Below, piece after piece: positions 707-58,620 of a stretch of 64,000 nucleotides of DNA. Source of the stretch: Antechinus flavipes (Eukaryota); contig NC_067404.1 in the NCBI RefSeq assembly GCF_016432865.1, positions 23,002,001 through 23,066,000 on the forward strand. The letters run 5' to 3'. How positions within the stretch are numbered: the first letter of the stretch is position 1; each line of letters begins with the position of its first letter. Made by a program: the position numbers and the translations under genes. The notes beneath the pieces are model-generated. The model saw only the letters and a list, made by a program, of their open reading frames with translations, was not told where the DNA came from and made no database searches.

Positions 707-864
707 NNNNNNNNNNNNNNNNNNNNNNNNNNNNNNNNNNNNNNNNNNNNNNNNNNNNNNNNNNNNNNNNNNNNNNNNNNNNNNNNNNNNNNNNNNNNNN
801 NNNNNNNNNNNNNNNNNNNNNNNNNNNNNNNNNNNNNNNNNNNNNNNNNNNNNNNNNNNNNNNN
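707..864. other. Assembly gap (N run)
   Basis: Run of n characters. Confidence 1.
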
Positions 865-5208: not shown

Positions 5209-6625
5209 TTTTTTTTTTAAATTTTATTTTATTTAATAATAACTTCGCATTGACAGAATCCATGCCAGGATAATTTCTACACGACATTATCCCTTGCAAT
5301 CACTTATGTTTCGTTTTTTCCCCTCCCTCCCTCCCCCCCCCCCAGGATGGCAAGCAGTCCTATATATGCTAAACATGTTGCAGTATATCCTAGATACAAT
5401 ACATATTTGCAGAACCGAACAGTTCTCTTGTTGCACAGGGAGAATTGGATTCAGAAGGTAAAAATAACTCGGGAAGAAAATCAAAACTGCAAATAGTTCA
5501 CATTCATTTCCCAGTATTCCTTCTTTGGGTGTAGCTGTTTCTGCCCATCATTTCTCCAATGAAACTCAGTTAAGTCTCTTTGTCAGAGAAATCCACTTCC
5601 ATCAGAATACATCCTCATACAATATCGTTGTCAAAGTGTATAATGATCTCCTGGTTCTGCTCATCTCACTTAGCATCAGTCCATGTAGGTCTCTCCAAGC
5701 CTCTCTGTATTCATCCTGCTGGTCATTCCTTACAGAGCAATAATATTCCATAACATTCATATACCACGATTTACCTAACCATTCTCCAATTGATGGGCAT
5801 CCATTCATTTTCCAGTTTCTAGCCACTACAAACAGGGCGGCCACAAACATTTTGGCACATACAGGTCCCCTTCCCTTTTTTAGTATCTCTTTGGGGTATA
5901 AGCCCAATAGAAACACTGCTGGATCAAAGGGTATGCACAGTTTGATAACTTTTTGGGCATAATTCCAGATCGCTCTCCAGAATGGCTGGATTCGTTCACA
6001 ACTCCACCAACAATGCATCAGTGTCCCCGTTTTCCCGCATCCCCTCCAACATTCATCATTATTTTTTCCTGTCATCTTAGCCAATCTGACAGGTGTGTAG
6101 TGATATCTCAGAGTTGTCTTAATTTGCATTTCTCTGATCAATAGTGATTTGGAACACTCTTTCATGTGAGTGGTAATAGTTTCAATTTCTTCATCTGAAA
6201 ATTGTCTGTTCATATCCTTTGACCATTTATCAATTGGAGAATGGCTTGATTTTTTATAAATTTGAGTCAGTTCTCTATATATTTTGTAAATGAGGCCTTT
6301 ATCAGAACCTTTAATTGTAAAGATGTTTTCCCAGTTTGTTACTTCCCTACTAATCTTGTTTGCATTCGTTCTGTTTGTACAAAGGCTTTTTAATTTGATA
6401 TAATCAAAATTTTCTATTTTGTGATTGGTAATGGTCTCTAGTTCATCTTTGGTCACAAATTTCTTTCTCCTCCACAAGTCTGAGAGATAAACTATCCTAT
6501 GTTCCTCTAATTTATTTATAATCTCGTTCTTTATGCCTAGGTCATGGACCCATTTTGATCTTATCTTGGTATGTGGTGTTAAGTGTGGGTCCTTGCCTAA
6601 TTTCTGCCATACTAATTTCCAGTTA
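5209..6625 (-). mobile_element. Young 5'-truncated LINE-1 (ORF2 C-terminus, 3'UTR, A-rich tail) with 15-bp TSD
   Basis: ORF 5602-6705 encodes the L1 ORF2 C-terminus including CWRGCGKTGTLMHCWWSC. TSD ttggaagaaatatct at 5194-5208 and 6626-6640; T-run tail at 5209-5240. Confidence 0.96.
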
Positions 6626-6697
6626 TTGGAAGAAATATCTAAATTAAATCTGCTTTGTTTGCATTTGTTGTCAAAGAGCCTGGGTTCAAGTGCTTGC

Positions 6698-8353
6698 TCT
6701 GTCACTTTTGTGTGTCATGTACCTCCTTGTTTGTAAAGCCAACCAAGCAAGCAGTTATTTGTTGAAAAGGATTTTATTATAAACTAGAAAATCATCAACA
6801 AACATGGTTATTTCCAAGTACAAATAAGGCCAGAACAATAGAATTATATATGAAGCTTTAAAAAATGTATTTGAATGATTTGAAAAATCTCATGTGGTAA
6901 TACCAACATTGCCCTTTCTGGATTCCTTTATGCTCTCTTATGGATCAAATATGCCATAGATATGTTAATCTTCTTGTTTGGGTAATTCCAAATTGACTTC
7001 TACATTGATTGGACCAACTCACATGTCCACCAATCGTTTTTTAGTGTGCCTGGTTTTCCCCAACCCTTCCAACATTGTCCAGTCTTTTTTTGGCCAATTT
7101 GCTGGATGTGAGGTGACAGACACTTCAGAGTCGTGTTGATCTACATTTCTCTTATTATTAATAATGTAGTAATGCCAATCCTTTTGGCAGGGAAGGATGA
7201 AGCCACAGAGATGATGAATGGAGCCACAGGGCTTTCAAATGATACATTTATGCCAGGGATTCATTTGAATACTATTCCCAGAAGCAGAAGTGGAAAGAGG
7301 GAGGGGTAGAGGCAAAGAGAAAGGAGGTGTACCCTTGTGCAGCATGACAAAAAGATAGTCTATTAACATTTCTGGAAGTGACCAGCCATATTGAGTTCTT
7401 ATTTATTAGCATAACTCCAAAATAGGAGTTAAATAGGAAGTTAAATTGAGAGGATATAATAGCCAGAGTGGTGGCTCTTAAATGTAAAGAGCCTACATTT
7501 AGGTGGACCTAATAAATGTAAAATCTTTACTTATCTGAATATTGAATATATAAACACTTTACTCATAATAATTGAAATGTGATTAAAAATGTTAAGCTGT
7601 TTTACGCACATCATATAATGCAGTAATCCTTAGAGTACTTGCTCATTTATACTAATCAGAAGAGTAATGTTCCATAATATGTTCCAGACCAACCTTAGAA
7701 TGAAAGAGACATTTCTTTATTGAAAAGTGTAATTGATATACTTGCCTCTTGGGGGAAAATGACTTTTCCTACTTTATAGGTATATTTAGCCCATTTAAAG
7801 GAATTTGCTTTTATTTCCTGTGCTTTTGCCTTGACCTTACTTTGTGACTCCATCTTTGACTTTGGAGGAAACAAGGGCTTTAATTCCGGGATTCCAAATC
7901 TTTTATGTGTCCTGAACCTCTCTAAGAGACTTAGTTTATGGACTCCTTCTGAGCATGTTTTAAATTGTGTAAAAAAAAATCAATCCCACAAAAGATACCA
8001 ATTATATTGAATTACTGTTATCATCATTTTTAAAAAAGCAAAAAAAAATCCATGAACCCCAGATTAAAAATTCTTGCCTTAATGGATGCCCAATTTAAAA
8101 TTTTTATTATTAAAATTTATAAAATCCCTTCTAGTAAATAACAGGAGCAAGTCCTTTAACACAGACCGCTTTATAAGCCCAAAGTAATCCCATGTAATTC
8201 CCCTTCTTTCTCTGACCTCTTGTAGCACTTGGCTTACATACCTCTCTTTTGGCACTTAGCGAAAGTCTTGGATCACAGGTAGCTGTTGCTCTGTTTAATC
8301 CCTTTACTAGCCAGTTATCTCTTTTAGAGTTGGAACTTTGTACTTCATATCTT
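6698..8353 (+). repeat. Inverted repeat arm A (1656 bp; reverse complement of 12279-13933)
   Basis: Direct comparison, e.g. acctccttgtttgtaaagccaacc vs ggttggctttacaaacaaggaggt. About 3 substitutions and 3 homopolymer-length differences seen. Confidence 0.97.
7880..8090 (+). mobile_element. hAT-type MITE (second family; duplicated within arm A')
   Basis: gggattccaaatctttt...ccatgaaccccagattaaaaattcttg resembles a recalled marsupial Charlie-like MITE. Confidence 0.5.
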
Positions 8354-10669
8354 TTTCATCTTTTTGTCTCCTCACCTTCACAGACCCTGATTGGGCACTT
8401 GAGAGATATTTGCATGAAAAATGGCTGGCTGAAGGAGTGCAGCACTAGTAATTGCATCTTATTTAGGAGCTCTTTCAGGTTATTTCCATTTTGCTCCCAT
8501 TAGCTGTATAACCTTGGTCAAATCACTCAACCTTTCTGAGTTTCCATTTCCTCACTTGTAAAATGAGGGTAATAATAAGAATAATCTACTTCCCAGAATT
8601 GCTGAAAGATTTAGACAACAATGTAATGTTGAGAGAATTAGACAACAAATATAAAATGCTTTGCAAACATGAAGATGGTGTGTCAATATTGGTTGTTGTT
8701 CTGGAGGGCCTCAACATTAATTAGGTAGCATTGTGAAGTACAGCATTTACTTTAAGGGAATGTGAAAAGAATTAGGGATCTTGTCTGACCCATGGAAGTT
8801 GTCAGGTTCTCCCCACCAGTAAGAGGGACAGGAACAAGGTTAAGAAGAGGATAAGATAGTGAAAGTCAATTTGCTTGACTGTTGTGCTACATGTTACAGT
8901 GACAGGAGAAGAAACTCTTGTGACTTTGTGAAGAAGTCAAAGGATTCTGTGTAGGGAGTTCCATTTGATCAACAGTCACAGCTAGTTGAAGAGCAAAGAA
9001 CCAATTTATTCCCCACAGTGCAACCAGTACTATTCTTGGAAGCAATATGATATGGTGGAAAAAGTGGTGGGCTTAGAGTCAGGAAAGAAAGCTGCTCTTA
9101 AATCAGACTTTTGACATTCAGTGATTTCACAATTCTCAGTTTCAATTTCCTCATCTGTAAAGTGAGGAAAAGGATATCTCTAACATCTGCCTCACAGAGT
9201 TGTTGGAAACCCCAAATGAGATCACAATGGCAAAGTGTTATACGCATTTTTAAAAAAACACTTCACTAGTACCAGCTGTTACTCATACATTGTCCCATAG
9301 TAATCTCCATATACTATGTTCCTATGTTATACTATGTATAACAGCTCTGAGGGGTGGGCAGGGTGTGTGCCATGTGATCAACCCCATTTGACAGACGAAA
9401 CTTGAGCTCTGAGAAGTTGGCCTTGGTCGAGGTCATGCAGTTTGATGTCTCAAAATGAGATTTTGTACTATCCTCCCTTTACTCTAAGATGAGTGATCTT
9501 TCTACTCTCCCCACCCCTGTTATCCCAGCTCTTGACTCCTTACATTAGAGGGCTCAATATGAGAAAGCAAGTAAGAAATTGACCCAATTAGAATGAAGGG
9601 CAACACAAATTCATTTTGCCAGCATTTATTTAGCTCCGACTGTGTGCACAGCCCCATACTAGGACTGGGGGTGGGGGGGAGGACTTAGTGGGGAAGAAAG
9701 GATAAAGCAAGGAAATTAGGAGCATGGTCTCAGCTCTTAAGGGGTGCAGTGTAATGGAAACCTTGGTTGGTGTTTGAGCTATTCCACCAGCGCCACCACC
9801 CCTATCTCCCATGGCATGACTCATTCACTTGTTTCCCATTATTATCTTTGTTTTTCTGCTGTGACATCCTGCATTGGACATGAAGAAGACTGGGTTCTTG
9901 AAGGCTATCCTAATAGAACAAGGGAGTTCTGGAAGATTAAGCTATACAAACAGTGACAGATTGTATGACTGCTTTCTGAAGAGCAGCCTAAGTTTCAAAA
10001 CAATCATGGAAATGAGGGGTCTTAACAACTCATGAAGACCATCTCCTAAGATTGTAAAGGGATTACAGTCTGTCAGTGAATGGTTTGTTCACATTGGGGA
10101 AATAACAGAGTCCTGAAGCATTGAAATATTACTCTTGCTATTATTAATTAATTCATGAATAGCATTCAGAAAGCATTTTATAAGTGTCAAACATTTATGT
10201 GTTTGGCCCTGAGAATACAAATAGGAAAAAGCCAGTTCCTATGTTCTGATTATTTTCATTGTAAATTGATCGCACTTTTGGTGACCTTCTAGGGTTTGAG
10301 TAAGAATAGTGATATTTCTTTCTGGAATGAGTTTCATTATTAAGGCAATTCAGAAGAATCTGTCCTTTATTCTCTTTTCTAAGATGTATTTTCAATAGTA
10401 GAAATCTCATATTAAATACTTGGGGAGCTTCTGACAGCCATGTTCTCTCCACAGCTTTGTAGCAGTTCTTATAGTTTCTCAATTTAATTTAGGAGTCTTA
10501 ATTATCTAAATTGCTTTTTTGCTATTACAAGTCTGCATCCTGTAATTCTAGGAGCCGTGCACAGCATGTGTCCTTTCAGCCAGTAAAAATGTCAATACAC
10601 TCCCAAAAGGTACTGTTAGACATTGCAGAAAATTTGGCTCCATGTGGAAATTCTCTATTAAATTGAGTT

Positions 10670-10905
10670 GTTGTTGAGTCATTCCTGTCATGTCCAAGTC
10701 TCTTTGACCCCATTTGGGGTTATCTTGGCAAATATATTGGAGTGGTTTGCCATTTCTTTCTCCACCCCATTTTACACAGATGAAGAAACTGAGGCAACAT
10801 GGTGAAGTGATTTGTCTGAGTTACACAGCTAGCAAGTGTCTGGGGCAGATTGAACCTTCCTGATTCCAGGCCTGGTGCGCTATCCATTGTACTATCTAGT
10901 TTCCC
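10670..10905 (-). mobile_element. CORE-SINE (MAR1/MIR-type)
   Basis: Antisense CORE (gaagaaactgaggcaa), tRNA-like head and RTE-like tail (gaccccatttggggttatcttggcaaa). Confidence 0.8.
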
Positions 10906-11318
10906 CATTAAATCAGTAACATCCATTATTAGCATTCCATACTAGATATTTCATGAAGAAATGAACCAGTATGAAGTGTTTGGGCAATCTTGTGGTTTGC
11001 CTTATACACTTGATAACACATGTTATTTTAGAACACATCTTCCATTCTTTACCTTTAGGTCAGGACTAACCAGTAGCATTTTACATTTCTTCCTTCTCTG
11101 TCCTTTCCTCTCCCCCTCCCACTTCTGAAACTGCCTTTGTCATATCTACTTCCAAGGGGAGCACCAGGAACACCAATCTCCTCTGTACATTCTACAAGCA
11201 ACAAGATGCTGAAATGGAGCTTTCCAGCCAGAGACGGGACATTTCCTGAGCAGCCACAGCTTTGGAAGTTGTATTGTGGGTAACCTTAAGTTTGAGTTCC
11301 TATAGCTACGGAGTTCTT

Positions 11319-11662
11319 TTTTATGTTAAACATGGTAGAAACACATGTTAAATCCAATATATGCTTACATATTTATACAATTATCTAGCTGCACAAGAAA
11401 AATCAAATCAAATGGAAAGAAGATAAGGAAGAAAACAAAAACAAGCAAACAACAACAGAGAGAGTGAAAATGGTATATTGTAATCCACACTCAGTTCCCC
11501 ATGATCCTTTCTCTGGGTGCAGATGGCTCTCCCCATCACAAGATCATTGGAACTGGCCTGAATCACCTCATGGTTGAAGAGGGCCACGTCCCTCAGAATT
11601 GGCCATCATATAATCTCGTTGTTGCTGTGGACAATGATCTCCTGGTTCTGCTCATTTCACTT
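11319..11662 (-). mobile_element. L1 3' fragment with degenerate 16-bp TSD
   Basis: L1 3' sequence flanked by tagctacggagttctt (11303-11318) and tagctatggaattctt (11663-11678). Confidence 0.75.
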
Positions 11663-11719
11663 TAGCTATGGAATTCTTAAGAGAGATGATTGCCTAGTGA
11701 AGAATGTTCTTTAAAGCCT

Positions 11720-11900
11720 CACTTATTAAACTGTGGTTTGTGACATCATATATGGTCTTGGAACTGAATGCAGGGGGTCACAAAATTATGATCTATTATC
11801 AGTAAATGTTTGATGTGTATACCTGTATATCTCTATACCAGGGGTCACTTAAAATTTCTCAGGTAAAAAGTGGTCATGAGTGGAAAAAGTTTAAGAAGCT
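11720..11900 (-). mobile_element. hAT/Charlie-type MITE
   Basis: Reverse-complement copy of the 398-566 family, ending gtggaaaaagtttaagaagc. Confidence 0.6.
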
Positions 11901-12278
11901 CCACTTTAGAAGAAGAAGAGGACAGTCCATCTGCTTCCTTGGGTAGTATCCCACTTGGGGAACAACAGTCATATATCACTGTAGGTCCAATGAGAAGGGA
12001 TCTGCTTACTTAGCACATTCCAAAGCACACTAGTCTTGGGGGTTAGGAGTGGGATTCTAAACAGGTACCCTGTTTCTCAGGTACCTGGCACATAGTAGGT
12101 ACTAGATAGAGATATTTGTTGAACAGTTGAGTTTATGCAAAAGAGGAAGTTAATAAATCATACAAGGCTGTCCCAATGGTAACCCCAGTTTAATTCCCTC
12201 CAGAGGGCTGTTAATAAGGAAGTTATTTGAATGCTTTATGTTTTTATATATGTTCCTGGGTTACAGGGAGTTCTTAAT

Positions 12279-13933
12279 AAGATATGAAGTACAAAGTTCC
12301 AACTCTAAAAGAGATAACTGGCTAGTAAAGGGATTAAACAGAGCAACAGCTACCTGTGATCCAAGACTTTCGCTAAGTGCCAAAAGAGAGGTATGTAAGC
12401 CAAGTGCTACAAGAGGTCAGAGAAAGAAGGGGAATTACATGGGATTACTTTGGGCTTATAAAGCGGTCTGTGTTAAAGGACTTGCTCCTGTTATTTACTA
12501 GAAGGGATTTTATAAATTTTAATAATAAAAATTTTAAATTGGGCATCCATTAAGGCAAGAATTTTTAATCTGGGGTTCATGGATTTTTTTTTTTGCTTTT
12601 TTAAAAATGCTGATAACAGTAATTCAATATAATTGGTATCTTTTGTGGGATTGATTTTTTTACACAATTTAAAACATGCTCAGAAGGAGTCCATAAACTA
12701 AGTCTCTTAGAGAGGTTCAGGACACATAAAAGATTTGGAATCCCGGAATTAAAGCCCTTGTTTCCTCCAAAGTCAAAGATGGAGTCACAAAGTAAGGTCA
12801 AGGCAAAAGCACAGGAAATAAAAGCAAATTCCTTTAAATGGGCTAAATATACCTATAAAGTAGGAAAAGTCATTTTCCCCAAGAGGCAAGTATATCAATT
12901 ACACTTTTCAATAAAGAAATGTCTCTTTCATTCTAAGGTTGGTCTGGAACATATTATGGAACATTACTCTTCTGATTAGTATAAATGAGCAAGTACTCTA
13001 AGGATTACTGCATTATATGATGTGCGTAAAACAGCTTAACATTTTTAATCACATTTCAATTATTATGAGTAAAGTGTTTATATATTCAATATTCAGATAA
13101 GTAAAGATTTTACATTTATTAGGTCCACCTAAATGTAGGCTCTTTACATTTAAGAGCCACCACTCTGGCTATTATATCCTCTCAATTTAACTTCCTATTT
13201 AACTCCTATTTTGGAGTTATGCTAATAAATAAGAACTCAATATGGCTGGTCACTTCCAGAAATGTTAATAGACTATCTTTTTGTCATGCTGCACAAGGGT
13301 ACACCTCCTTTCTCTTTGCCTCTACCCCTCCCTCTTTCCACTTCTGCTTCTGGGAATAGTATTCAAATGAATCCCTGGCATAAATGTATCATTTGAAAGC
13401 CCTGTGGCTCCATTCATCATCTCTGTGGCTTCATCCTTCCCTGCCAAAAGGATTGGCATTACTACATTATTAATAATAAGAGAAATGTAGATCAACACGA
13501 CTCTGAAGTGTCTGTCACCTCACATCCAGCAAATTGGCCAAAAAAAGACTGGACAATGTTGGAAGGGTTGGGGAAAACCAGGCACACTAAAAAACGATTG
13601 GTGGACATGTGAGTTGGTCCAATCAATGTAGAAGTCAATTTGGAATTACCCAAACAAGAAGATTAACACATCTATGGCATATTTGATCCATAAGAGAGCA
13701 TAAAGGAATCCAGAAAGGGCAATGTTGGTATTACCACATGAGATTTTTCAAATCATTCAAATACATTTTTTAAAGCTTCATATATAATTCTATTGTTCTG
13801 GCCTTATTTGTACTTGGAAATAACCATGTTTGTTGATGATTTTCTAGTTTATAATAAAATCCTTTTCAACAAATAACTGCTTGCTTGGTTGGCTTTACAA
13901 ACAAGGAGGTATATGACACACAAAAGTGACAGA
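12279..13933 (-). repeat. Inverted repeat arm A' (derived copy of 6698-8353)
   Basis: Reverse complement of arm A. The MIR-like sequence cut at 13933 continues intact upstream of 6698, indicating A is the donor. Confidence 0.97.
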
Positions 13934-14174
13934 TAAAGAATGAATCATGGAAACAGTCAATAATTATATGAAAGATGATGATAATGCTATACCCAAATTT
14001 TTGGAATATTGTTAAGAAAGTTCTCAAAGGATAAATAATATCTCTAAAGTCATTAACAAAATAGAAGAGTAATGAAGTGAAAAAGTACACATGAAGAGAA
14101 CTGAACTTGTAGACCTCAAACTTCACTATAAATCAACAGTCATTTTGTACTGGTTAGAAAATATAAAAATAAGT
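13934..14174 (+). repeat. Inverted repeat arm B' (241 bp; reverse complement of 15148-15388; old L1 ORF2 sequence)
   Basis: ORFs 13866-14126(-) and 15196-15414(+) translate almost identically. 3 substitutions counted. Abuts arm A' with no spacer. Confidence 0.96.
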
Positions 14175-14289
14175 ACCTTGGAGGAATTAAGTAAAAGTGA
14201 CTCCATACCCAAGGGCCATGTTGTACATTGGGGGCCTATGTGGACATTGGGGACCTTGTCATCCAAGGTATGGTTCCCATCTAAGTTTT

Positions 14290-14530
14290 TTGTTGTTATT
14301 TAGTTGTTTCAATAGTGTGCATCCATTTGAGATTTTCTTGGCAAAGACACTAGTGTGGCTTGACATTTCATTATCCAGCTCATTTTATAGATGAGGAAAC
14401 TGTGACAAAAGGAATTAAGTGAGTTGCCCAAGGTCACATAGCTAGAAATCTGAGGCCAGATTGGAACTCAGGAAGTTGAGTCTTTCTGACTCCAGACTTG
14501 GAGCTCTGTCCACTGTACCACTTAACTGTA
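14290..14530 (-). mobile_element. CORE-SINE (MAR1-type)
   Basis: ttttcttggcaaagacactagtgtgg...gatgaggaaactg...gagtctttctgactccag antisense SINE pattern. Confidence 0.8.
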
Positions 14531-14959
14531 CTAAGTTTTAATCAGGAGATTTTCCCATATTACTTCTTTGTGGTAGAAAAAGAGAAAAATAGACGCTTGG
14601 AGATAAGTTACCAGTATCTGAGTCTGTGTGATGAGGAAATTGAGGGAATTTATGGATTTTGAATAGCAAGTGGTTAATTGTGGGAATTGAGTGAACCATA
14701 CTGACTCCATCTTGTAACTCAACTCTGGAGCTAGATCAGTTATCTTTCTGTTCAGTTGTGGGTCTAGTTCAATTTCTGCCTTGTGAGAAAACTTCATTCA
14801 ATTGTGAGAATTGGGAGAAAACCTTATTACATTGTTAGAACCTAGGCCTATGTGGCTGAGAAACTGGATCCACCTGCTGCTTAGAGACCCTTAAACTAAA
14901 GACCGAGGTTATGCTGAGAAGAAACTCAGATTGAAAAAAATGATGCAAGGAGTTTTCTC

Positions 14960-16400
14960 ACAATTCATTGTGAAATATGGTATAACATGTGAATTGAAAC
15001 CCTACTTTCTACAAGATGAATTCTAATTTTGTCAGTCACTCCTATTAAATGGTGAGTTCTTTCTTAGGCAATTTACATTTTTGAGTTTATTCCACACTGA
15101 GATTTTGAATCCATTTATTTGGGATACTTACTTGTCTAGTCTGTTTGACTTATTTTTATATTTTCTAACCAGTACAAAATGACTGTTGATTTATAGTGAA
15201 GTTTGAGGTCTACACGTTCACTTCTCTTCATGTGTACTTTTTCACTTCATTACTCTTCTATTTTGTTAATGACTTTAGAGATATTATTTATCCTTTGAGA
15301 ACTTTCTTAACAATATTCCAAAAATGTGGGTATAGCATTATCATCATCTTTCATATAATTATTGACTGTTTCCATGATTCATTCTTTAACTTCCATTATT
15401 ATGTCTCCATTTAGGTCTGTGTCCTTTCTGCTCCATTAATTGATTACTATTTTATTGTGTTATGGCATATAAAGCATGTCCTTAGTATTTTTTCCCTTTT
15501 TACATTTATTTGCAAGTCCTCTGTGTGCAGATCCATGATTGGTTTTTGCAAAAATGACATTAGGGTGCTGAGAAATATGCATATTTCTATTCAGAAGATA
15601 CCCTAAATCATTGGTTCTCAAAGTCTGGTCCACAGCATCCTCAGAATCTCTGAAATCCTTTCAGAGAGTCTACAAATTCATAATTGGTTTTTATTTTTAA
15701 TGTGATCAATATCTATAACTATAACCCACATAAACAAAAACTCTTTGGACAGTTCCTCAATCATTTTTAATAGGATAAAGATATTGAGAACAAAAGTTTG
15801 AGGACCACTGCTAAGTCTTTTAAACCTAATTTCTAGGACAATTTGTTTGATTCTCCAACACACACAAAGAAAGGAACATTGAAGTCACCTGTTGATGTTG
15901 TTTCACTACGTATGACCTTTTGCAATTGAGTTAATTTTTTAACATAAATTGCCATCTGAAGCATATGGTTGGTTGTCTGTGGTTCCTTAAGTACAATGTC
16001 GTTTTCTTTTTTATCTCAGTTTATATTGTGAATTTTTCCTTTACCTTGTCTGATAATATGTTGGCATTACCTGCTTTTGTGTTCCCTTGATAGGTAATAA
16101 ATTTTCTTCCTTGCTCTTTATATTTCTTATAAATCACAAACAGTGGTGTTTGTTTTTTCTATCCAAACCTATTACTGTCTTTAATAATATTGGATTTTTA
16201 AATCCATTCACATTTAATATCATGAGAATTAAATTTGTTTTCATCCATCTGTGTCTCTACTATTATTTGCTTTTTAAATTGGGATTCCCTTTCTTTTAAA
16301 ACAATAATTTGTTCATATGATTAGCATTGCTTATTCTGTTTTAATTCAATTTTATTTCCACAGATTCTTCATTTCATCTCTTCTTTCCCTCACAATTTTT
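14960..16400 (-). mobile_element. Old degenerate L1 ORF2 fragments (contains donor arm B)
   Basis: Reverse strand shows decayed ORF2 motifs (post-endonuclease region; PDLKLYYK-like cctcaaacttcactataaatc). Confidence 0.6.
15148..15388 (-). repeat. Inverted repeat arm B (donor of 13934-14174)
   Basis: L1-like sequence continues on both sides of this copy but stops abruptly at both ends of B'. Confidence 0.95.
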
Positions 16401-18720: not shown

Positions 18721-19029
18721 TGTAATAGGGAAATAGTTAATGAAATAAAATAATTTAAAAAATAAATACGTGTTGAATTAATTCTTCTTACCAGACTATC
18801 AGAACAGCTTATAAATAAGTTCTGGCAATGGATAAATATTACAAGTTTTCCCATTAAATATGAAAATAAAATAAAAATGCACTCATTCTCCACTATTATT
18901 TTTTTTATAGAAATAGTTGGAGATTGGTACATGAGAAGTATTTGAGTGTGTTAAGGATTAGTGTTCCCCGGTGTTAATTATTAATATTGTAAACCTTTGT
19001 TGAAATTTCTGGCACATAAAATCTGTCTC

Positions 19030-19320
19030 CTTCTGTGTTTCTGTCTCTCTGGCCCTCCTTTCCTCCCTCCTCCTTCTTTTTCTCTCTCTTCCCCTCTCCC
19101 TCTCTTTACCCTTCTCCCTGCCCCTCCTCCTTTCTCTTCCCCTATCCCTTTCCCTTCCTCTCTTTTTTTCCTTCTACTTACCTTTTATTTCCCTATCTCT
19201 CCTTCCCCTTCTTTTTCTCTCTCTCCTTCTCCATCTTCATTTCCTCCTTCCCTCTTCCCCTATTTCAATTTTCCTTCCTCCTTCCACCCTTCCTTCCCCT
19301 CTTCCCTTTCCCCTACCTCT
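19030..19320 (+). repeat. Pyrimidine-rich (CT) low-complexity tract
   Basis: About 290 bp composed almost entirely of C/T; it generates the spurious P/S/F-rich ORFs. Confidence 0.9.
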
Positions 19321-20619
19321 AGTGGTAATTTGAAAAAAAAATTCTGCTTTTTTATCTTGTCAGCTGCATGACCCAGAAGTCCAATCATTTCTGACACTAT
19401 GATGCATGTTGCAGCTATTTTGGATCGAATTTCTCCATCATTTCCCCTTGATCTTTGTCAGTATTTTAGAATGATGGTGATAACTTGGGGGCAGGTTTAT
19501 TTTGCTCTTTCCTTCTTAACTAAAACTGTTATTTATCTTAGCTTCTTTGCTAATTTCTTGGGGCTTTCTAAGTAAGCCATCACAACTTCAGGAAATAGAT
19601 AGAATCTTGTTTTTGACCATGCTTATATTTAATTTCAATCTTGTCTAATGACAAAGTAAAGAATGAGATGACCTCATAATCAAAATAACAGAACTTAGTC
19701 TCTGCTTTGACATAAAATGGGTGTAATACTAGGCAAGTTACTTAATTTTTCAGAGTTCTAGTTGTGTGGAATAGAGAGATAGAGTGTAGAAATTACAGAA
19801 ATGTTTAAATTTTTTTCTGAAATTTTTTTTATTATTTCTATGTCTCTGTGACCTGCATAAGTACCGTATATGCAAGCCAATATTTACTTAAAACTTTAGA
19901 TATATTTACTTAACCAGAAATGATGACATTTATCCTTGTTCAATGTTATCAATATTTAGATTATTAAATGCAGTCAGCTCAGTAATCTGAAGTTTGAAGG
20001 ACTGACTGATTATTCCTTTCAGAATCAGGAAAACAAAGCATGCCATTCTAATCTGCCTTTGGCACCAATTTTTTAACATTCAATTAGGGGAGAGGGCACC
20101 TATTTCTCAATGCTCCCCAACCTATGATGTAATCCTTTGTAACCAAACCTATAAAAACAGTTTATCTTTCCTAAATCTTTAGGCATTTGTATAAGTGTAT
20201 AAAAATTATTATGAAGAGTCAGGGCATCTTTTGTACTTAATGAGAATGCTTCTTTCTGCTAGAACTGATGTACAGCTATTTGCATATTCCAGTAAGAGAA
20301 GTTAATTTATTTAACAAGCATGTATTTTGGGTTTACTTTGTGGTCAGACACTGTTAGGCTCTTGAGAGTCAGACAGAAATGAAACAGTCTCTGCCTTCAA
20401 GGAACTTAAATTCTATTGGAGGAAACTCTTAGTACACAGAGAAGTAAATATCAAATATGTCAAGTATTTGTGACTTAATAAATAAAGTAAATACAGAGTA
20501 ACTTCGGGGTAAGGAAGGAAGATACTAAGAACTAGGGAAATCAGAAGAGAACAAAATCTGTGGTTATGCATCTTAGAGCCTGCATTACATTTCTGGAATG
20601 GATCATTAAAAGCATAGCT

Positions 20620-28521: not shown

Positions 28522-28694
28522 NNNNNNNNNNNNNNNNNNNNNNNNNNNNNNNNNNNNNNNNNNNNNNNNNNNNNNNNNNNNNNNNNNNNNNNNNNNNNNN
28601 NNNNNNNNNNNNNNNNNNNNNNNNNNNNNNNNNNNNNNNNNNNNNNNNNNNNNNNNNNNNNNNNNNNNNNNNNNNNNNNNNNNNNNNNNNNNNN
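28522..28694. other. Assembly gap within a (CA/TG) simple repeat
   Basis: N run flanked by acacatac and gtgtat. Confidence 1.
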
Positions 28695-31740: not shown

Positions 31741-32734
31741 ATCCTAGAACTTAAAAAAAGACTGTAAATTGTGGGAAAGTTTCATTCAAATAGGGAATTG
31801 TCCTGCTCCTATACATATAAATAGATGCATACACAAACATGTGACTATATAGATACCTGTGTCAACATAACAATATCTATATGCATCATATATTTTCTTG
31901 CTACAGCCACATGGAATGGTAAAAATGAATACTGGCAATAGAAGCAGAGGTCCTGGATTCAAAGCCTGCCTTTTTCATTCACAGATAGGAAGACCTGGGT
32001 TTGAGTCTCATCCCTGAACGTAACATATTTGTTACGTGACTTTGGCTAAAGTACTTCATTTGTCACTGCCCCCAGGCAGCTGTCGCAGTTACAGAAGGGC
32101 TGCCAGTCTGCATTGGCAATGAGAATTCATCAGAAATTTGCTAAGCCAGTGAAATCAAAGGTCTGGACAAGAATGTGCACACACAGGTATTTACATGTGC
32201 ATTTGCACACACATGTAATCACACCAGCGTCTATGTCATGGAATGAAATGAGTGGCTGTAATTTGCAAGAAGAAGAAAACTATGTCTTTGGATGTTAGAG
32301 CCATAAAACCAAGGGTCTGAGGTTTTCCTGGAATTCTGTTCCTGGGAAATCAACCTTTCAGTTCAAATCATTGAGTATTTTGTAAAGATTTGGGATATAT
32401 TGAACGTTGGGCTAGGAGGTAGTACATAGACAAAAGTAAAGTGGTCCATGATCTTAAGAAGACTAGAATATAATGTAGTCGATATGAAAAGCAGCAAATA
32501 CAAAATGTGTCCGAGTTAAGTTAGAAGTGATTTCTAGGGTGTAGAGAGAGTGCTAACACCTCTTAAAGGAAACAGCATGAGTTGAGGGTGGAAGGAAGTG
32601 AAAGGTTCCAAAAGGCAAAGGCGATTAGTGTATTCATTCTTACTGCAGAGCACTTTTGCACTTAGGAGGTTTATGTATGGGAAGAAATGGGGGAAGCCAG
32701 TTTGGCTGGAATACAGAGGGCATTAAAAGGATCG

Positions 32735-32965
32735 TGGTTGTTCGGTTATTTCAGTTGTGTCTCACTCTTCGTGATCCCATTGGAGCTTTTCTTGGCAAAG
32801 ATATGAAAGTGGTTTGTCATCTTTTTTCTGTAATAATTTTACAGAAGAGAAAACTGAGGCAAACAGGGTTAAGTGACTTGCTCAGAGTCACACAGTTAGT
32901 AAGTAACTGAGGCCACATTTGGATACAAGTCTTCCTGACTTCCTGACTTCGAGCACAGTGCTGTA
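32735..32965 (-). mobile_element. CORE-SINE (MAR1-type)
   Basis: ctcttcgtgatcccattgg...gaaactgaggcaaacagggttaagtgacttg antisense SINE. Confidence 0.8.
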
Positions 32966-33824
32966 TCCCAGGGCTTCTTAAACTTTTTGCACTTGAAAAT
33001 TTTTAAACAACTCCAGGTAGATAGGTATGTATAATAGGTATGCAAGAGGTCATTGTGGAAGGGTCAGCTATCAAGAAGTCCGATCGTAGGGCCAAGCCAA
33101 GCACAGAGATAACTTCACTGCAAGGCAGACGGTAATAAGTGCTATAGGATATCAATAAGCCAAGCACTCAGTGAAAAGACAGAGAAAAGTGCATGGAAGA
33201 ATCAGAAGTGAAGCTGGAAGCTTAGAATTCTGGGCCTATCATGAGTGAGCTGTGTGTCCCTGAACAAATTTCTTATTCTTTGGGTTTAAATTTCCTAAAT
33301 GCTGGGATAAATGATTACTAAGGATTCTTTGGCTCTTTTCTTAGATAAAAGACAGTAACTGACTGAGAGAATAAGGGAAGACTTCACGGAAAGGGTTGCA
33401 TTTGAGTTGGGTCTTGAGTGACATGTAGAATTTTGACTGGCAAAAATAGGTGGGAAGTGTGCTCTGGGCAGAGGAAATATAGGGCATTGATATAAAATAT
33501 CAAAAGCATATGTGGGGGAATGATGAGTGGTCCTCTTTTGCTGGATTCTAGAGAACATGAAGCAAAGGAATAGCAAGAGGTCAAATTGAAAGAAGAAGAC
33601 TGGAACCAAATCTTGGAGGGTTTTGATGGTCAGCCTTTGCAGTTTGACTTAATTCAATAGACAATGGGGAATCATTAGAGACTTCTAAGCAGTAGAGTGA
33701 CATGATCAGTTTTGTAATTGTAGCAACATTTGCAGGATAAATTAGTGAAGAGGATAAACTTTCAGGGGGTTCACAGAGTTATTTCTCTAAATTGTGTCTA
33801 TTTCTTTAAAGAAGAATACTATTA

Positions 33825-36475
33825 GGCTGAAAACAGAGAAAGAAAATTATAGACCAATCTCCCTAATGAATATTGATGCTAAAATCTTAAATAAAATATT
33901 AGCAAAAAGATTACAGAAAATCGTCACCAGGATAATACACTATGACCAAGTAGGATTTATACCAGGAATGCAGGGCTGGTTCAATATTAGGAAAACTATT
34001 AACATAATTGACTATATCAACAACCAAACAAACAAAAACCATATGATCATCTCAATAGATGCAGAAAAAGCATTTGATAAAATCCAACAGCCATTCCTAA
34101 TAAAAACACTTGAGAGCATAGGAATAAAAGGACCTTTCCTTAAAATAGTTAGGAGCATATATTTTAAACCTTCAGTAAGCATCATATGCAATGGGGAAAA
34201 ACTGGAACCTTTTCCAGTAAGATCTGGAGTAAAACAAGGTTGCCCACTATCACCATTATTATTCAATATTGTATTAGAAACACTAGCCTCTGCAATAAGA
34301 GTCGAGAAAGAGATTAAAGGAATTAGAGTAGGCAATGAGGAAACCAAACTATCACTCTTTGCAGATGATATGATGGTATACCTAGAAAACCCCAGAGATT
34401 CTACTAAAACGCTATTAGAAATAATTCATAATTTTAGCAAAGTAGCAGGATACAAAATAAATCCCCATAAATCCTCAGCATTCTTATACACCACCAACAA
34501 AATCCAAGAGCAAGAGATACAAAGAGAAATTCCATTCAAAATAACTGTTGATAGCATAAAATATTTGGGAATCTACCTACCAAAGGAAAGTCAGGAATTA
34601 TTTGAGCAAAATTACAAAAAAGTTTTCACACAAATAAAGTCAGACTTAAATAATTGGAAAAATATTAAGTGCTCTTGGATAGGCCGAGCGAATATAATAA
34701 AGATGACAATACTCCCTAAACTAATCTATTTATTTAGTGCTATACCAATCAGACTTCCAAGAAAATATTTTAATGATTTAGAAAAAATAACAACAAAATT
34801 CATATGGAACAATAAAAAGTCAAGAATCTCAAGGGAATTAATGAAAAAAAATCAAATGAAGGTGGTCTAGCTGTACCTGATCTAAAATTATATTATAAAG
34901 CAGCAGTCACCAAAACCATTTGGTATTGGCTTAGAAATAGATTAGTTGATCAGTGGAAAAGGTTAGGTTCACAAGACAGAATAGTCAACTATAGCAATCT
35001 AGTGTTTGACAAACCCAAAGATTCTAAATTTTGGGATAAGATTTCATTATTTGATAAAAACTGCTGGGATAACTGGAAATTAGTATGGCAGAAATTAGGC
35101 AAGGACCCACACTTAACACCACATACCAAGATAAGATCAAAATGGGTCCATGATCTAGGCATAAAGAATGAGATTATAAATAAATTAGAGGAACATAGAA
35201 TAGTTTATCTCTCAGACTTGTGGAGGAGAAAGAAATTTGTGACCAAAGATGAACTAGAGACCATTACTGATCACAGAATAGAAAATTTTGATTATATCAA
35301 ATTAAAAAGCCTTTGTACAAACAGAACGAATGCAAACAAGATTAGTAGGGAAGCAACAAACTGGGAAAACATCTTTACAATTAAAGGTTCTGATAAAGGC
35401 CTCATTTCCAAAATATATAGAGAACTGACTCAAATTTATAAAAAATCAAGCCATTCTCCAATTGATAAATGGTCAAAGGATATGAACAGACAATTTTCAG
35501 ATGATGAAATTGAAACTATTACCACTCACATGAAAGAGTGTTCCAAATCACTATTGATCAGAGAAATGCAAATTAAGACAACTCTGAGATATCACTACAC
35601 ACCTGTCAGATTGGCTAAGATGACAGGAAATAATAATGATGAATGTTGGAGGGGATGCGGGAAAACTGGGACACTGATGCATTGTTGGTGGAGTTGTGAA
35701 CGAATCCAGCCATTCTGGAGAGCAATCTGGAATTATGCCCAAAAAGTTATCAAACTGTGCATACCCTTTGATCCAGCAGTGTTTCTATTGGGCTTATACC
35801 CCAAAGAGATACTAAAAAAGGGAAAGGGACCTGTATGTGCCAAAATGTTTGTGGCAGCCCTGTTTGTAGTGGCTAGAAACTGGAAAATGAATGGATGCCC
35901 ATCCATTGGAGAATGGCTGGGTAAACTGTGGTATATGAATGTTATGGAATATTATTGCTCTGTAAGGAATGACCAGCAGGATGAATACAGAGAGGCTTGG
36001 AGAGACCTACATGGACTGATGCTAAGTGAGATGAGCAGAACCAGGAGATCATTATACACTTCGACAACGATATTGTATGAGGATGTATTCTGATGGAAGT
36101 GGATTTCTCTGACAAAGAGACTTAACTGAGTTTCATTGGATAAATGATAGACAGAAACAGCTACACCCAAAGAAGGAATACTGGGAAATGAATGTGAACT
36201 ATTCGATTTTTGATTTTCTTCCCGAGTTATTTTTACCTTCTGAATCCAATTCTCCCTGTGCAGCGGGAGAACTGTTCGGTTCTGCAAATATGTATTGTAT
36301 CTAGGATATACTGCAACATATTTAACATATATAGGACTGCTTGCCATCTTGGGGGGGGGAGGAGGGAGGGAGGGGAAAAAACAAAACATAAGTGATTGCA
36401 AGGGATAATGCTGTGTAAAAATTATCCTGGCATGGATTCTGTCAATACAAAGTTATTATTAAATAAAATTAAATT
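33825..36475 (+). mobile_element. Young 5'-truncated LINE-1 (RT domain, C-terminal Cys domain, 3'UTR) with 16-bp TSD
   Basis: ORFs 33794-34870 ([10 protein letters not shown]...QGCPLSP...LFADD) and 35002-36093. TSD aagaagaatactatta at 33809-33824 and 36476-36491; canonical TTT/AAAG endonuclease site; one frameshift in the A8 run at 34844-34851. Confidence 0.98.
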
Positions 36476-40679: not shown

Positions 40680-40910
40680 TATGTGGCACTGGATAGAACA
40701 CTGGGCCTGGAGTCAGGAAGACCTGAGTTCAAATGCAGTCTTAGACACTCACTAGAAGTGTGATCCTGGGTAAGTCACTTTACTCTGCCTCAGTTTCATC
40801 ATCTGTAAAATAAGCTGTAGAAGGAAATGGCAAATCACTTCATGAAGAATGGGGTCACAAAGAATTGGCCATGAGTGAAACAACTGAACAATAACAACAA
40901 ATATAATGAT
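40680..40910 (+). mobile_element. CORE-SINE (MAR1-type)
   Basis: ggatagaacactgggcctggagtcaggaagacctgagttcaaat head, CORE and tail. Confidence 0.8.
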
Positions 40911-42373: not shown

Positions 42374-42548
42374 NNNNNNNNNNNNNNNNNNNNNNNNNNN
42401 NNNNNNNNNNNNNNNNNNNNNNNNNNNNNNNNNNNNNNNNNNNNNNNNNNNNNNNNNNNNNNNNNNNNNNNNNNNNNNNNNNNNNNNNNNNNNNNNNNNN
42501 NNNNNNNNNNNNNNNNNNNNNNNNNNNNNNNNNNNNNNNNNNNNNNNN
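42374..42548. other. Assembly gap
   Basis: N run. Confidence 1.
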
Positions 42549-44359: not shown

Positions 44360-44585
44360 TGGTGTGGCAAAGGATAGTGCTTGGCTTGGAATTAGGAAGA
44401 CTCCAGTATGGCCTCAGACACTGACTAGCTGGGTGACTCTGGGCAAGTCACATCACCCTGTTTGCCTGAGTTTCTTCACCTGTAAAATGAGCTGGAGAAG
44501 GAAATGGCAGAGCACTCCAGTATCTCAGCCAAGAAAACCGCAAATGGGTTGGATTCAACTGAGTATAACTGAACAACAGGCATAG
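44360..44585 (+). mobile_element. CORE-SINE (MAR1-type)
   Basis: ctcagacactgactagctgggtgactctgggcaagtca...ctggagaaggaaatggca. Confidence 0.8.
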
Positions 44586-45849
44586 GTGTGGATTTTTTTC
44601 TCCTTGGTTCTACTTCTCTTTGCATCAGTTTATCTTAAGTCGCCATTTCATAAATAAAAGAGGCTTCAGGACAGAACCTTGAGGGACTTGGGGTTAGAGA
44701 GTGTGATCTACACGAGGATCCAGCAAAGGAGACAGAAGGAACAACCAGAGAGGTAGGAGAGAACCATAAGAGAATGGGTTTCTGATAACCTAGGAAAAAG
44801 GAGAGTGGGCAATAGTGTCAAAAGACTGCAGAGAGGTCATGGAGAATGAGGATTACCTCCCTGAATTTCTTGAAGTTCAAACTAAAATCCCATTTTCTAA
44901 AGGAAATTTTTAATTTTTTAAAATTTCTTTTTAATTTTTTTATTCTAGCACCTTTTTTTTTTCTAGTACCCTTTTTAATTCTAGTACCTTGTTGTTGTTA
45001 ATTTTGGTTTGTTTTATAAGTAGCTTGTTCTGTACATATTTGTTTGCCTGTAGTCTCCCTCATTAGGTCGTCTATTCCTTAAGGGCAGGGGGACTGTCTT
45101 TGGGTTCTTTTTGTAAATAGTATTTTATTTTTTCCAATTACATGTAAAGATAGTTTCCAACATTGATTTTTTTAAATTTTGAATTGTATTTTGTTTTTCT
45201 TTAATTATTTGCAAAGACAATTTTAACTTTCTTTTTATTTTGTTATATATTTTCAAAACATATGCAAGGCTAATCAACATTCATTTTTTATAGGATTTGG
45301 AGTTAGTTCTCCATCGCTTCTTTTCCTCTCCTCTCCCTGTGATGGCAAGCAATCCGATATAGGTTATACATGTGCAATTGTGGAAATATATTTCCACATT
45401 AGTCATGTTGTGAAAGAAGAAACAGAACAAAAGGGCAATACTATGAGAGAGAACAAAAAATAATTAAATAGTATGCTTCGATCTGTATTTGGACTCCATA
45501 GTTCTTCTTTTGAATGCAGATAGCATTTTCCATCGAGTCTTTTGGAAATGTTTTGGATCATTGTATCGTTGAGAAAAGTTAAGTCAATCATGGTAGGTCA
45601 TCCTTTTGTCTTTTTTTTGTATTCCCAGTGCTTAGCACAATGCCTAGCACATAATAGACACTTAACAATATTGATTGATTGATTAAACTTTTACTTGTAG
45701 TTGTCAGAACATCCCCTTGGTGAGGCTGCACAGATCTGGGCTTGAAATTGGAAAGGAAACCGTGAATCACAATCTCTGTGCTGCCTAATGGTGTGATTAT
45801 GGACAAATCATCTTCTCTCAGCCTCCATTTCCTCATCAATTAAATAGGG

Positions 45850-46079
45850 ATGTGTCTGTTCAGTCATTTCTCGCCGTGTCTGGCTCTCTGTGATCCCATT
45901 TGGAGAGATCTTCTTGGCAAAGATATTGGAGTGGTTTGTCATTTGCTGCTCCAGGTCATTTTTACAGATGAGGAAACTGAGGCAAGTGGGGTCAAATGAC
46001 TTATGCCCATGGTCACATAGTATCTGAAACTGGATTTGAACTCAGGCAGAATCCAAGCCTGGTGCTCTATCCACTGTAT
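45850..46079 (-). mobile_element. CORE-SINE (MAR1-type)
   Basis: Antisense tail, CORE and head up to the gap. Confidence 0.8.
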
Positions 46080-46304
46080 NNNNNNNNNNNNNNNNNNNNN
46101 NNNNNNNNNNNNNNNNNNNNNNNNNNNNNNNNNNNNNNNNNNNNNNNNNNNNNNNNNNNNNNNNNNNNNNNNNNNNNNNNNNNNNNNNNNNNNNNNNNNN
46201 NNNNNNNNNNNNNNNNNNNNNNNNNNNNNNNNNNNNNNNNNNNNNNNNNNNNNNNNNNNNNNNNNNNNNNNNNNNNNNNNNNNNNNNNNNNNNNNNNNNN
46301 NNNN
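46080..46304. other. Assembly gap
   Basis: N run. Confidence 1.
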
Positions 46305-58389: not shown

Positions 58390-58620
58390 ATTTTGGGCAG
58401 TTAGGTGGTGCTGCAGTGGATAAAGTAAATTCTGAGTTCAGATCTGACTCCAGACACTTACTATGTGACCTTGGAAAAGTCACTTAACCCTGTTTGCCTC
58501 AGTTTCCTCATCTGTGAAATGAGGCTAGAGAAGAAGGAAATGGCAAACCACGCCAATATCTTTGCCAAGAAAACCCCAAATGGAGTCACAGAGAGTTAGA
58601 TGCGACTAAAAAACAAAAAT
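58390..58620 (+). mobile_element. CORE-SINE (MAR1-type)
   Basis: gggcagttaggtggtgctgcagtgga head, CORE, gaaggaaatggcaaaccac tail. Confidence 0.85.

What the first reader, a model, noticed from the sequence alone, without database searches (positions are those of the whole stretch)
6698..13933. 1.65-kb near-perfect inverted duplication with a 3.9-kb spacer
Seen: 6698-8353 and 12279-13933 are reverse complements, with about 3 substitutions and 3 homopolymer indels counted by eye (~99.6%). The arms are a mosaic of unique DNA, old L1 and a MITE, so this is a local segmental duplication and not two TE insertions. Inference: it is very recent relative to the repeats it contains. A young L1 lies only ~70 bp from the outer breakpoint, possibly by coincidence.
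Basis: partly seen in the sequence, partly recalled or inferred. Interest (0 to 1): 0.7.

Follow-up and report, generated by a model that had tools for sequence, protein, structure and literature searches.

The report
Two-piece backwards-copied insertion in marsupial DNA
A 1.9-kb stretch of non-coding marsupial DNA is stitched from backwards copies of the DNA on its left and on its right, a young and unusually large but ordinary scar of DNA copying that doubled back at a break, with no sign of function and not yet checked against raw reads.

Summary
The inverted duplication is in the sequence. 6698-8356 and 12276-13933 are reverse complements at 99.46%, with 4 substitutions and 3 homopolymer length differences, and they are 3919 nt apart. 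Chance gives inverted matches of about 15-22 nt.

It is only half of the structure. The right arm is joined directly at 13933|13934, with no shared bases, to a second inverted copy. That copy, 13934-14174, is the reverse complement of 15148-15388 (241 nt, 3 differences).

The layout is a-X-a'|b'-Y-b. A 1899-nt block (12276-14174) lies between X and Y, and each half mirrors its own side. There is no target-site duplication, poly-A tail, terminal repeat or splice signal. The arms have no other copies in the window.

Best reading: one break or stalled fork at 12275|14175. Each 3' end folded back and copied its own flank, 1.66 kb on the left and 0.24 kb on the right. The two ends were then joined. 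This is a kb-scale case of known fold-back or template-switch insertion.

I saw no function. Earlier notes of this scan list many smaller template-switch scars in this genome, and another note describes this same block.

The parts
6698..8356 (+). Arm a: the template (source copy) of the long inverted copy, 1659 nt. Mostly unique DNA with an old LINE ORF2 trace at 6949-7161.
   Evidence: 99.46% to 12276-13933 in reverse complement; tblastx to LINE ORF2 at 35551-35769; no other nucleotide-level copy in the window
8357..12275 (.). Spacer X, 3919 nt, single copy. It is the loop of the left fold-back and holds a SINE-like copy (10654-10889) and old LINE pieces (11390-11903).
12276..13933 (-). a': the inverted copy of arm a, 1658 nt, and the left part of the inserted block. 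The inner joint J1 is at 12275|12276, with at most 2 nt (AA) of possible microhomology.
13934..14174 (-). b': the inverted copy of 15148-15388, 241 nt, and the right part of the inserted block. It is joined to a' at 13933|13934 (J2) with no shared base, and to Y at 14174|14175 (J3).
   Evidence: I3; 98.76% over 241 nt
14175..15147 (.). Spacer Y, 973 nt, single copy. It is the loop of the right fold-back and holds a SINE-like copy at 14316-14524.
15148..15388 (+). Arm b: the template (source copy) of b', 241 nt. It differs from b' by 3 transversions (15215 C/A, 15221 C/G, 15326 G/T).

Best explanation
A single local copying accident inserted 1899 nt (12276-14174) between what were neighbouring bases, 12275 and 14175. 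The chromosome broke there and both ends were resected to long 3' single strands. The left 3' end folded back on its own strand 3.9 kb behind it and copied 8356 down to 6698, making a'. The right 3' end folded back 1 kb behind it and copied 15148 up to 15388, making b'. The two extended ends were then joined bluntly at 13933|13934 and the gaps filled. What the sequence shows directly: the layout a-X-a'|b'-Y-b, the exact ends of each copy, the blunt middle joint, and the lack of transposon or retrocopy marks. What is inferred: the break, the resection, the self-priming, that a and b are the originals, and that X and Y were once adjacent. The result is a pair of back-to-back inverted repeats with no demonstrated function. 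The long one (1.66-kb arms, 3.9-kb spacer) could allow the spacer to flip by recombination, or form a long RNA duplex if transcribed.
For: Each half of the block mirrors the flank on its own side. 12276 pairs with 8356 and 13933 with 6698. 13934 pairs with 15388 and 14174 with 15148. This is what two self-primed 3' ends of one break would write. It needs only 3 new joints, all within 8.7 kb. The middle joint has 0 shared bases and the outer joints have at most 1-2, as expected if extended ends are captured by end joining. The spacers (3919 and 973 nt) lie within the 766-70,466 nt range (median 3428) reported for human fold-back inverted duplications (PMC3907307). In yeast, fold-back priming at a break, Pol delta synthesis, unwinding and capture by the other end through NHEJ has been shown genetically (PMC11724301). 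The block has no target-site duplication or poly-A tail; its A-rich end is itself copied from b. The arms are unique in the window. Five of the 7 substitutions between copies are transversions, and two lie 6 nt apart in b. That is weakly suggestive of error-prone repair synthesis (P about 0.045).
Against: No reads, depth or related species could be examined, so neither the reality of the block nor the former adjacency of 12275 and 14175 is shown. The copied tracts (1.66 kb and 241 nt) are far longer than the fold-back insertions measured at yeast breaks, which are mostly under 14 bp and reach about 150 bp. Inverted microhomology at the priming sites is at most 2 nt at J1 and cannot be determined at J3 without the ancestral sequence, whereas human fold-back junctions showed 2-8 nt. 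I know of no report of kb-scale fold-back at both ends of a single break. b/b' differ by 1.2% and a/a' by 0.18% (Fisher P 0.03). For a single event this needs chance, error-prone synthesis, or later gene conversion between the long arms.
Confidence: 0.45

Rival explanations
1. The product is the same but made at a replication fork without a two-ended break (serial template switching of the FoSTeS/MMBIR kind). The nascent strand stalls at 12275 and switches to the opposite-strand template at 8356. It copies back to 6698, switches again to 15388, copies back to 15148, and returns to 14175.
For: The layout and joints are the same. All templates lie within 8.7 kb, as is usual for fork-based switching. 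The clustered transversions in b fit error-prone replicative repair. Short and kb-to-Mb template switching are well documented (PMC5453318, PMC7954356, PMC11293582). Earlier notes of this scan report many small template-switch scars in this genome (unchecked).
Against: This needs three switches, one of them onto DNA ahead of the fork. The middle joint has no microhomology and the others have at most 1-2 nt, whereas MMBIR junctions typically show 2-5 nt (established knowledge). The sequence alone cannot separate this from the two-ended fold-back.
Confidence: 0.3
2. Assembly artefact. The block, or its placement, was created by the long-read assembler or by chimeric reads, and the animal has only a, X, Y and b.
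For: If the genome is the published yellow-footed antechinus assembly, as earlier notes say (unchecked), it was built from noisy PacBio reads with wtdbg2 and polished with 100-bp reads (PMC9290055). The homopolymer differences between the arms look like unpolished consensus errors.
Against: The block leaves and re-enters the flanking path cleanly at one point inside an uninterrupted stretch with no N runs. An artefact would need three false joints, each supported by several reads. Missed-adapter palindromic reads give arms with no spacer, not a-X-a'. Haplotype mixing of an inversion or of a tandem duplication does not produce joints J1 and J3 (my reasoning). The copies differ at 7 substitutions, so they are not one sequence written twice.
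Confidence: 0.12
3. Circle or tandem-duplication intermediate. The 6.8-kb segment 6698-15388 (without the block) was circularised or tandemly duplicated, joining 15388 to 6698. A 1.9-kb fragment across that joint was then re-inserted, inverted, into its own source locus.
For: The block is exactly the reverse complement of b followed by a, which is a head-to-tail joint of the segment. The joint is blunt, as many circle joints are. Another first-stage note reads it this way. Circularly permuted inserts are the accepted signature of circular intermediates, as in cattle colour-sidedness (Durkin et al. 2012; from my own knowledge).
Against: This needs about five breaks: two to make the circle, two to cut out the fragment and one at the target. 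It also needs the fragment to land inside its own 6.8-kb source out of a genome of about 3 Gb. Only 28% of the supposed circle is present. The fold-back reading explains the same permuted order with one break.
Confidence: 0.07
4. Reversed polarity or two events. The contiguous block a'b' is the original, and a and b are later inverted copies placed 3.9 kb to its left and 1 kb to its right. Alternatively, a' and b' arose at different times.
For: The divergence is unequal: 0.18% for a/a' against 1.2% for b/b' (Fisher P 0.03). No repeat element spans any boundary in the window, so the direction of copying could not be fixed.
Against: This needs four new joints at two separate target sites. It also needs the two copied pieces to share exactly one boundary (13933|13934) by coincidence.
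Confidence: 0.04
5. Transposon or retrocopy. The arms are copies of a mobile element, or the block is a reverse-transcribed (back-spliced) RNA inserted by the LINE machinery.
For: A 97%-identical, 5'-truncated LINE copy ends 71 nt from arm a. The b-then-a order resembles a back-splice.
Against: There is no target-site duplication, no added poly-A tail and no terminal inverted repeats. The bases flanking the b|a joint are not splice signals on either strand. The arms have no other copies in the window.
Confidence: 0.02

Closest known systems
Fold-back inverted duplications with a single-copy spacer (human inv-dup-del chromosomes, Hermetz et al. 2014, PMC3907307; yeast and tumour fold-back inversions)
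   Same: An inverted copy is separated from its original by a single-copy spacer of a few kb (here 3919 and 973 nt; human median 3428). The proposed steps are the same: break, resection, and a 3' end that pairs with its own strand and primes synthesis.
   Different: The human cases duplicate up to megabases, lose the chromosome end and pass through a dicentric chromosome. Here synthesis stopped after 1.66 kb and 0.24 kb, both flanks are kept, both ends appear to have folded back, and the result is a small interstitial insertion. Inverted microhomology of 2-8 nt could not be shown here.
Fold-back (snap-back) templated insertions at double-strand breaks (yeast, Pol delta plus NHEJ, PMC11724301; SD-MMEJ and Pol theta end joining, PMC2943611, PMC5728401)
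   Same: An inverted copy of DNA next to the break is inserted at the repair joint. The extended end is captured by the other end with 0-5 nt of microhomology.
   Different: Those inserts are mostly 2-34 nt and reach about 150 nt, with loops of tens of nt and usually one end only. Here the tracts are 241 and 1658 nt, the loops are 1-4 kb, and both sides took part.
Template-switch mutations and FoSTeS/MMBIR complex rearrangements (Loytynoja and Goldman 2017, PMC5453318; PMC7954356; DUP-TRP/INV-DUP, PMC11293582)
   Same: Nearby sequence is re-copied in reverse complement in one event. Several templated pieces are joined, and there may be extra point changes near the joints.
   Different: The four-point model has one switch-and-return of tens of nt. 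This case needs two templated pieces of kb scale. One joint has no microhomology. There is no pre-existing inverted repeat as in DUP-TRP/INV-DUP, and no triplication.
Translocation through circular intermediates (cattle colour-sidedness, Durkin et al. 2012; from my own knowledge)
   Same: The order of the insert is circularly permuted relative to its source (b before a).
   Different: There the whole circle is re-inserted at a distant locus. Here only 1.9 of 6.8 kb is present, it is inverted, and it sits inside its own source interval.

Membership tests
Fold-back inverted duplication (inv-dup with disomic spacer) | An inverted copy separated from its original by a non-duplicated spacer | tested here: met
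   a/a' with a 3919-nt spacer and b'/b with a 973-nt spacer
Fold-back inverted duplication (inv-dup with disomic spacer) | Short inverted microhomology (2-8 nt) at the joint between spacer and inverted copy | tested here: inconclusive
   at most 2 nt (AA) at J1. J3 cannot be scored without the ancestral sequence.
Fold-back inverted duplication (inv-dup with disomic spacer) | Loss of the distal chromosome segment, or healing by a telomere, translocation or ring | tested here: not met
   both flanks continue normally, so the event is interstitial. It works like a fold-back but is not a member of the inv-dup-del class.
Short template-switch mutation (four-point model) | The new sequence is the reverse complement of nearby sequence | tested here: met
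Short template-switch mutation (four-point model) | One switch and one return, with tracts of tens of nt | tested here: not met
   two templated pieces of 1658 and 241 nt
MMBIR/FoSTeS complex rearrangement | Microhomology of about 2-5 nt at every template-switch joint | tested here: not met
   J2 has 0 nt, J1 at most 2, J3 at most 1 on the testable side
MMBIR/FoSTeS complex rearrangement | Excess point mutations near the joints | tested here: inconclusive
   5 of 7 differences are transversions and two lie 6 nt apart in b. The numbers are small.
Transposable element insertion (MITE or LINE) or retrocopy | Target-site duplication, terminal repeats or a poly-A tail, and other copies in the genome | tested here: not met
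   none of these was found. Other copies could be sought only within the 64-kb window.
Insertion from a circular DNA intermediate | The order of the insert is circularly permuted relative to its source | tested here: met
   the block is the reverse complement of b followed by a
Insertion from a circular DNA intermediate | The insert represents the whole circle | tested here: not met
   1899 of 6792 nt
Assembly artefact | No reads cross the joints, and the combined depth over the arms equals one copy | not testable with these tools

The most novel reading that the evidence does not exclude
The block is a fragment of an extrachromosomal circle (or of a transient tandem duplication) of the 6.8-kb segment 6698-15388, cut across its closing joint and re-inserted, inverted, into the very locus it came from. 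That would be a germline record of circular DNA re-integrating at its source.
Probability: 0.07. Interest if true: 0.55.

Novelty: new member of a known kind. Interest (0 to 1): 0.3.

Why it matters
If real, this is a clean natural footprint in which both sides of one break point seem to have copied their own flanks backwards over kb distances. That bridges the short fold-back insertions measured in yeast and the megabase fold-back duplications seen in patients. It also creates a young 1.66-kb inverted repeat. That repeat could drive inversion of its 3.9-kb spacer, or give a long double-stranded RNA if transcribed. Neither consequence has been shown. For genome annotation the lesson is practical: this is a local rearrangement scar, not a mobile element or a gene feature.

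Tried and rejected
I sent no letters of that stretch, or of the identical left arm, to outside sequence searches; they were used only in calculations on the window itself (ORF and repeat listing, local BLAST, scripts). Read laying was therefore impossible.

2. Direction of copying from repeat continuity. I looked for transposon copies running across each boundary (6697|6698, 8356|8357, 15147|15148, 15388|15389, and a joined 12275+14175) by sensitive blastn and tblastx against the rest of the window. No element spans any boundary, so polarity rests on parsimony alone.

3. Extra small templated patches beside the joints. An 11-mer scan gave nothing relevant.

4. Retrocopy or back-splice reading. 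Rejected because there is no poly-A tail, target-site duplication or splice dinucleotides.

5. Inversion with staggered breaks (a-b'-M'-a'-b). Rejected because the observed order is a-X-a'-b'-Y-b.

6. Missed-adapter palindromic reads, haplotype mixing of an inversion, and collapse of a tandem duplication. Each fails to produce joints J1 and J3 (my reasoning only).

7. MITE in the arm. Not confirmed.

8. Pfam scan of the neighbouring LINE ORFs. The ORF at 5602-6705 has no family hit. The related longer copy has RVT_1.

9. A literature search for inverted false duplications in long-read assemblies gave nothing specific.
Full report
**Observation**

The repeat finder and a self-BLAST of the window both recover the reported pair. 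6698-8356 aligns with 13933-12276 in reverse complement over 1661 columns at 99.46%.

A global alignment that included 60 nt of flank on each side lists every difference.
- Homopolymer length differences: G5/G4 at 7751, A9/A7 at 7971 and A9/A11 at 8039.

Outside these limits the similarity collapses at once: 34 of 58 and 45 of 64 flanking columns differ. The longest exact inverted match is 792 nt, against 15-22 nt in shuffled copies of the window. There are no N runs between 865 and 28521. The four N runs elsewhere were left untouched.

**What the finding leaves out**

The same BLAST and the repeat finder (pair I3) show a second inverted pair. 13934-14174 is the reverse complement of 15148-15388 (241 nt, 98.76%). 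It starts at the very base after the right arm ends.

Printing the three joints against their templates gives these pairings:
- 12276 pairs with 8356, and 13933 with 6698.
- 13934 pairs with 15388, and 14174 with 15148.

The layout is L - a(6698-8356) - X(3919 nt) - a'(12276-13933) | b'(13934-14174) - Y(973 nt) - b(15148-15388) - R. The unit of change is a 1899-nt block (12276-14174) made of two backwards copies, and each half mirrors the flank on its own side (sizes). Put another way, the block is the reverse complement of b followed by a. Another first-stage note on this same stretch described it as the inverted junction of a circle spanning the locus. I reached the same geometry independently.

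**Joints**

- J2 (13933|13934) has no shared base.
- J1 (12275|12276) has at most two (AA).
- J3 (14174|14175) has at most one on the side that can be scored.

True microhomology at J1 and J3 cannot be known without the pre-insertion sequence.

**What it is not**

The block has no target-site duplication. Its A-rich right end is itself copied from b, so it is not an added poly-A tail. The bases next to the b|a joint are not splice signals on either strand, so a reverse-transcribed back-spliced RNA is not supported.

Arms a and b have no nucleotide-level relatives in the rest of the window. Only an old LINE ORF2 trace at 6949-7161 appears, at the protein level.

The neighbouring element at 5220-6626 is a 5'-truncated copy of a LINE. 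It is 97.2% identical to 35069-36475, whose upstream ORF carries a reverse-transcriptase domain. It ends 71 nt from arm a, and nothing ties it to the event.

**Mechanism (inference)**

The simplest history has three new joints and one target site: the block was inserted between 12275 and 14175.

The strand logic works out exactly for two self-primed ends of one break.
- After resection, the left end is a + strand 3' tail ending at 12275. If it folds back and primes at 8356, it writes the complement of 8356 down to 6698, which is a'.
- The right end is a - strand 3' tail ending at 14175. If it primes at 15148, it writes what appears on the + strand as the complement of 15388 down to 15148 at positions 13934-14174, which is b'.
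- Joining the two extended ends gives the blunt J2.

Two papers support the steps. Human fold-back inverted duplications always carry a single-copy spacer of 766-70,466 nt (median 3428), explained as the fold-back loop (PMC3907307). The two spacers here (3919 and 973 nt) fall in that range. In yeast, fold-back priming beside a break, Pol delta synthesis, unwinding, and capture by the other end through NHEJ with 0-5 nt of microhomology has been shown genetically (PMC11724301).

What is unusual here is the scale and the symmetry. The copied tracts are 1658 and 241 nt, against mostly under 14 bp and up to about 150 bp in yeast. Both sides appear to have done it.

A fork-based series of three template switches (FoSTeS/MMBIR; PMC5453318, PMC7954356 and PMC11293582) writes the same sequence and cannot be separated from the break model by sequence alone. 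I rate it somewhat lower, because one joint has no microhomology and one switch would have to reach ahead of the fork.

A circle or tandem-duplication intermediate also fits the permuted order. It needs about five breaks and a landing inside its own 6.8-kb source.

**Age**

- The a/a' pair differs by 3-4 substitutions in about 1657 nt (0.18-0.24%).
- The b/b' pair differs by 3 in 241 nt (1.2%; Fisher P 0.03-0.05).
- Pooled, this is 0.37%. That corresponds to roughly 0.8-1.8 million years at assumed rates of 2.2e-9 to 1e-9 per site per year (the rates are assumptions).

This is an upper bound for two reasons.
- Earlier notes of this scan say the genome is the yellow-footed antechinus (I did not check this). 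That assembly was built from noisy PacBio reads with wtdbg2 and polished with 100-bp reads (PMC9290055). Such reads cannot be placed uniquely in a 1.66-kb near-identical repeat, so some differences, above all the three homopolymer ones, may be leftover consensus errors.
- Five of the seven substitutions are transversions (P about 0.045 against an expected one third), and two lie 6 nt apart in b. That looks more like error-prone synthesis or sequencing error than ordinary drift.

The neighbouring LINE pair differs by 2.7%, so the event is younger than that insertion and much younger than the old LINE trace inside arm a.

**Is it real?**

This could not be tested. I kept the letters of 11000-16000, and of the identical left arm, out of outside sequence searches. 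Without run ids, read laying could not be used either.

The arguments against an artefact are indirect.
- The block leaves and re-enters the flanking path at one point inside uninterrupted sequence.
- An artefact would need three false joints, each with multi-read support.
- The common long-read artefact, a palindromic read from a missed adapter, gives arms with no spacer.
- Mixing the haplotypes of an inversion or of a tandem duplication does not create J1 or J3.
- The copies differ at seven substitutions.

I put the artefact at about 0.12.

**Comparison and novelty**

The structure works like a fold-back or template-switch insertion. It is not a member of the clinical inv-dup-del class, because nothing distal is lost. 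It does not fit the short four-point template-switch class, because there are two pieces of kb scale. It does not fit strict MMBIR, because one joint is blunt.

It is a new and rather large, tidy instance of a known kind of mutation, in non-coding DNA, with no evidence of function. Possible consequences are inferred only: recombination between the 1.66-kb arms could flip spacer X, and a transcript through the region could form a long duplex.

Earlier notes of this scan list about 50 template-switch observations in this genome, nearly all far smaller. They are unchecked by me and are used only as context.

**Verdict**

The best reading is a one-step, two-piece, backwards-copied insertion. Interest is modest (0.3). 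The decisive read-level and cross-species tests remain to be done.

Noticed in passing
window 5220-6626 and 35069-36475 (with 33794-34870): Two copies of a young LINE lie in opposite orientation 28 kb apart and are 97.2% identical over 1408 nt. The longer copy has an ORF with a reverse-transcriptase domain (RVT_1, E 6e-47). The 5220-6626 copy is 5'-truncated at 6626. The pair is a possible substrate for inversion by recombination.
   Followed up: partly
window 10654-10889, 14316-14524, 32722-32954, 40687-40842, 44368-44548, 45836-46049, 48738-48884, 55109-55229, 58432-58600: A SINE-like repeat family of about 150-190 nt has at least nine copies at 70-80% identity. One copy lies in each spacer (X and Y), in the same orientation.
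   Followed up: no
window 19020-19320: A tract of about 300 nt on the + strand is made almost only of C and T (GC skew -0.59, AT skew -0.52). It could form triplex or H-DNA. The mechanical ORF at 18997-19371 lies over it.
   Followed up: no
window 15215 and 15221 (with 14107 and 14101): Two of the three differences between b and b' are transversions 6 nt apart. Overall 5 of the 7 substitutions between the copies are transversions. This spectrum is unusual for ordinary drift.
   Followed up: partly
window 12211-12218 and 12274-12281: The 8-mer TTAATAAG at joint J1 also occurs 63 nt upstream, within an 18-nt direct repeat at 78% identity. This is probably chance in AT-rich DNA.
   Followed up: no
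window 707-864, 28522-28694, 42374-42548, 46080-46304: Four N runs of 158-225 nt were left as they are. ORFs listed across 46080-46304 are artefacts of the Ns.
   Followed up: no
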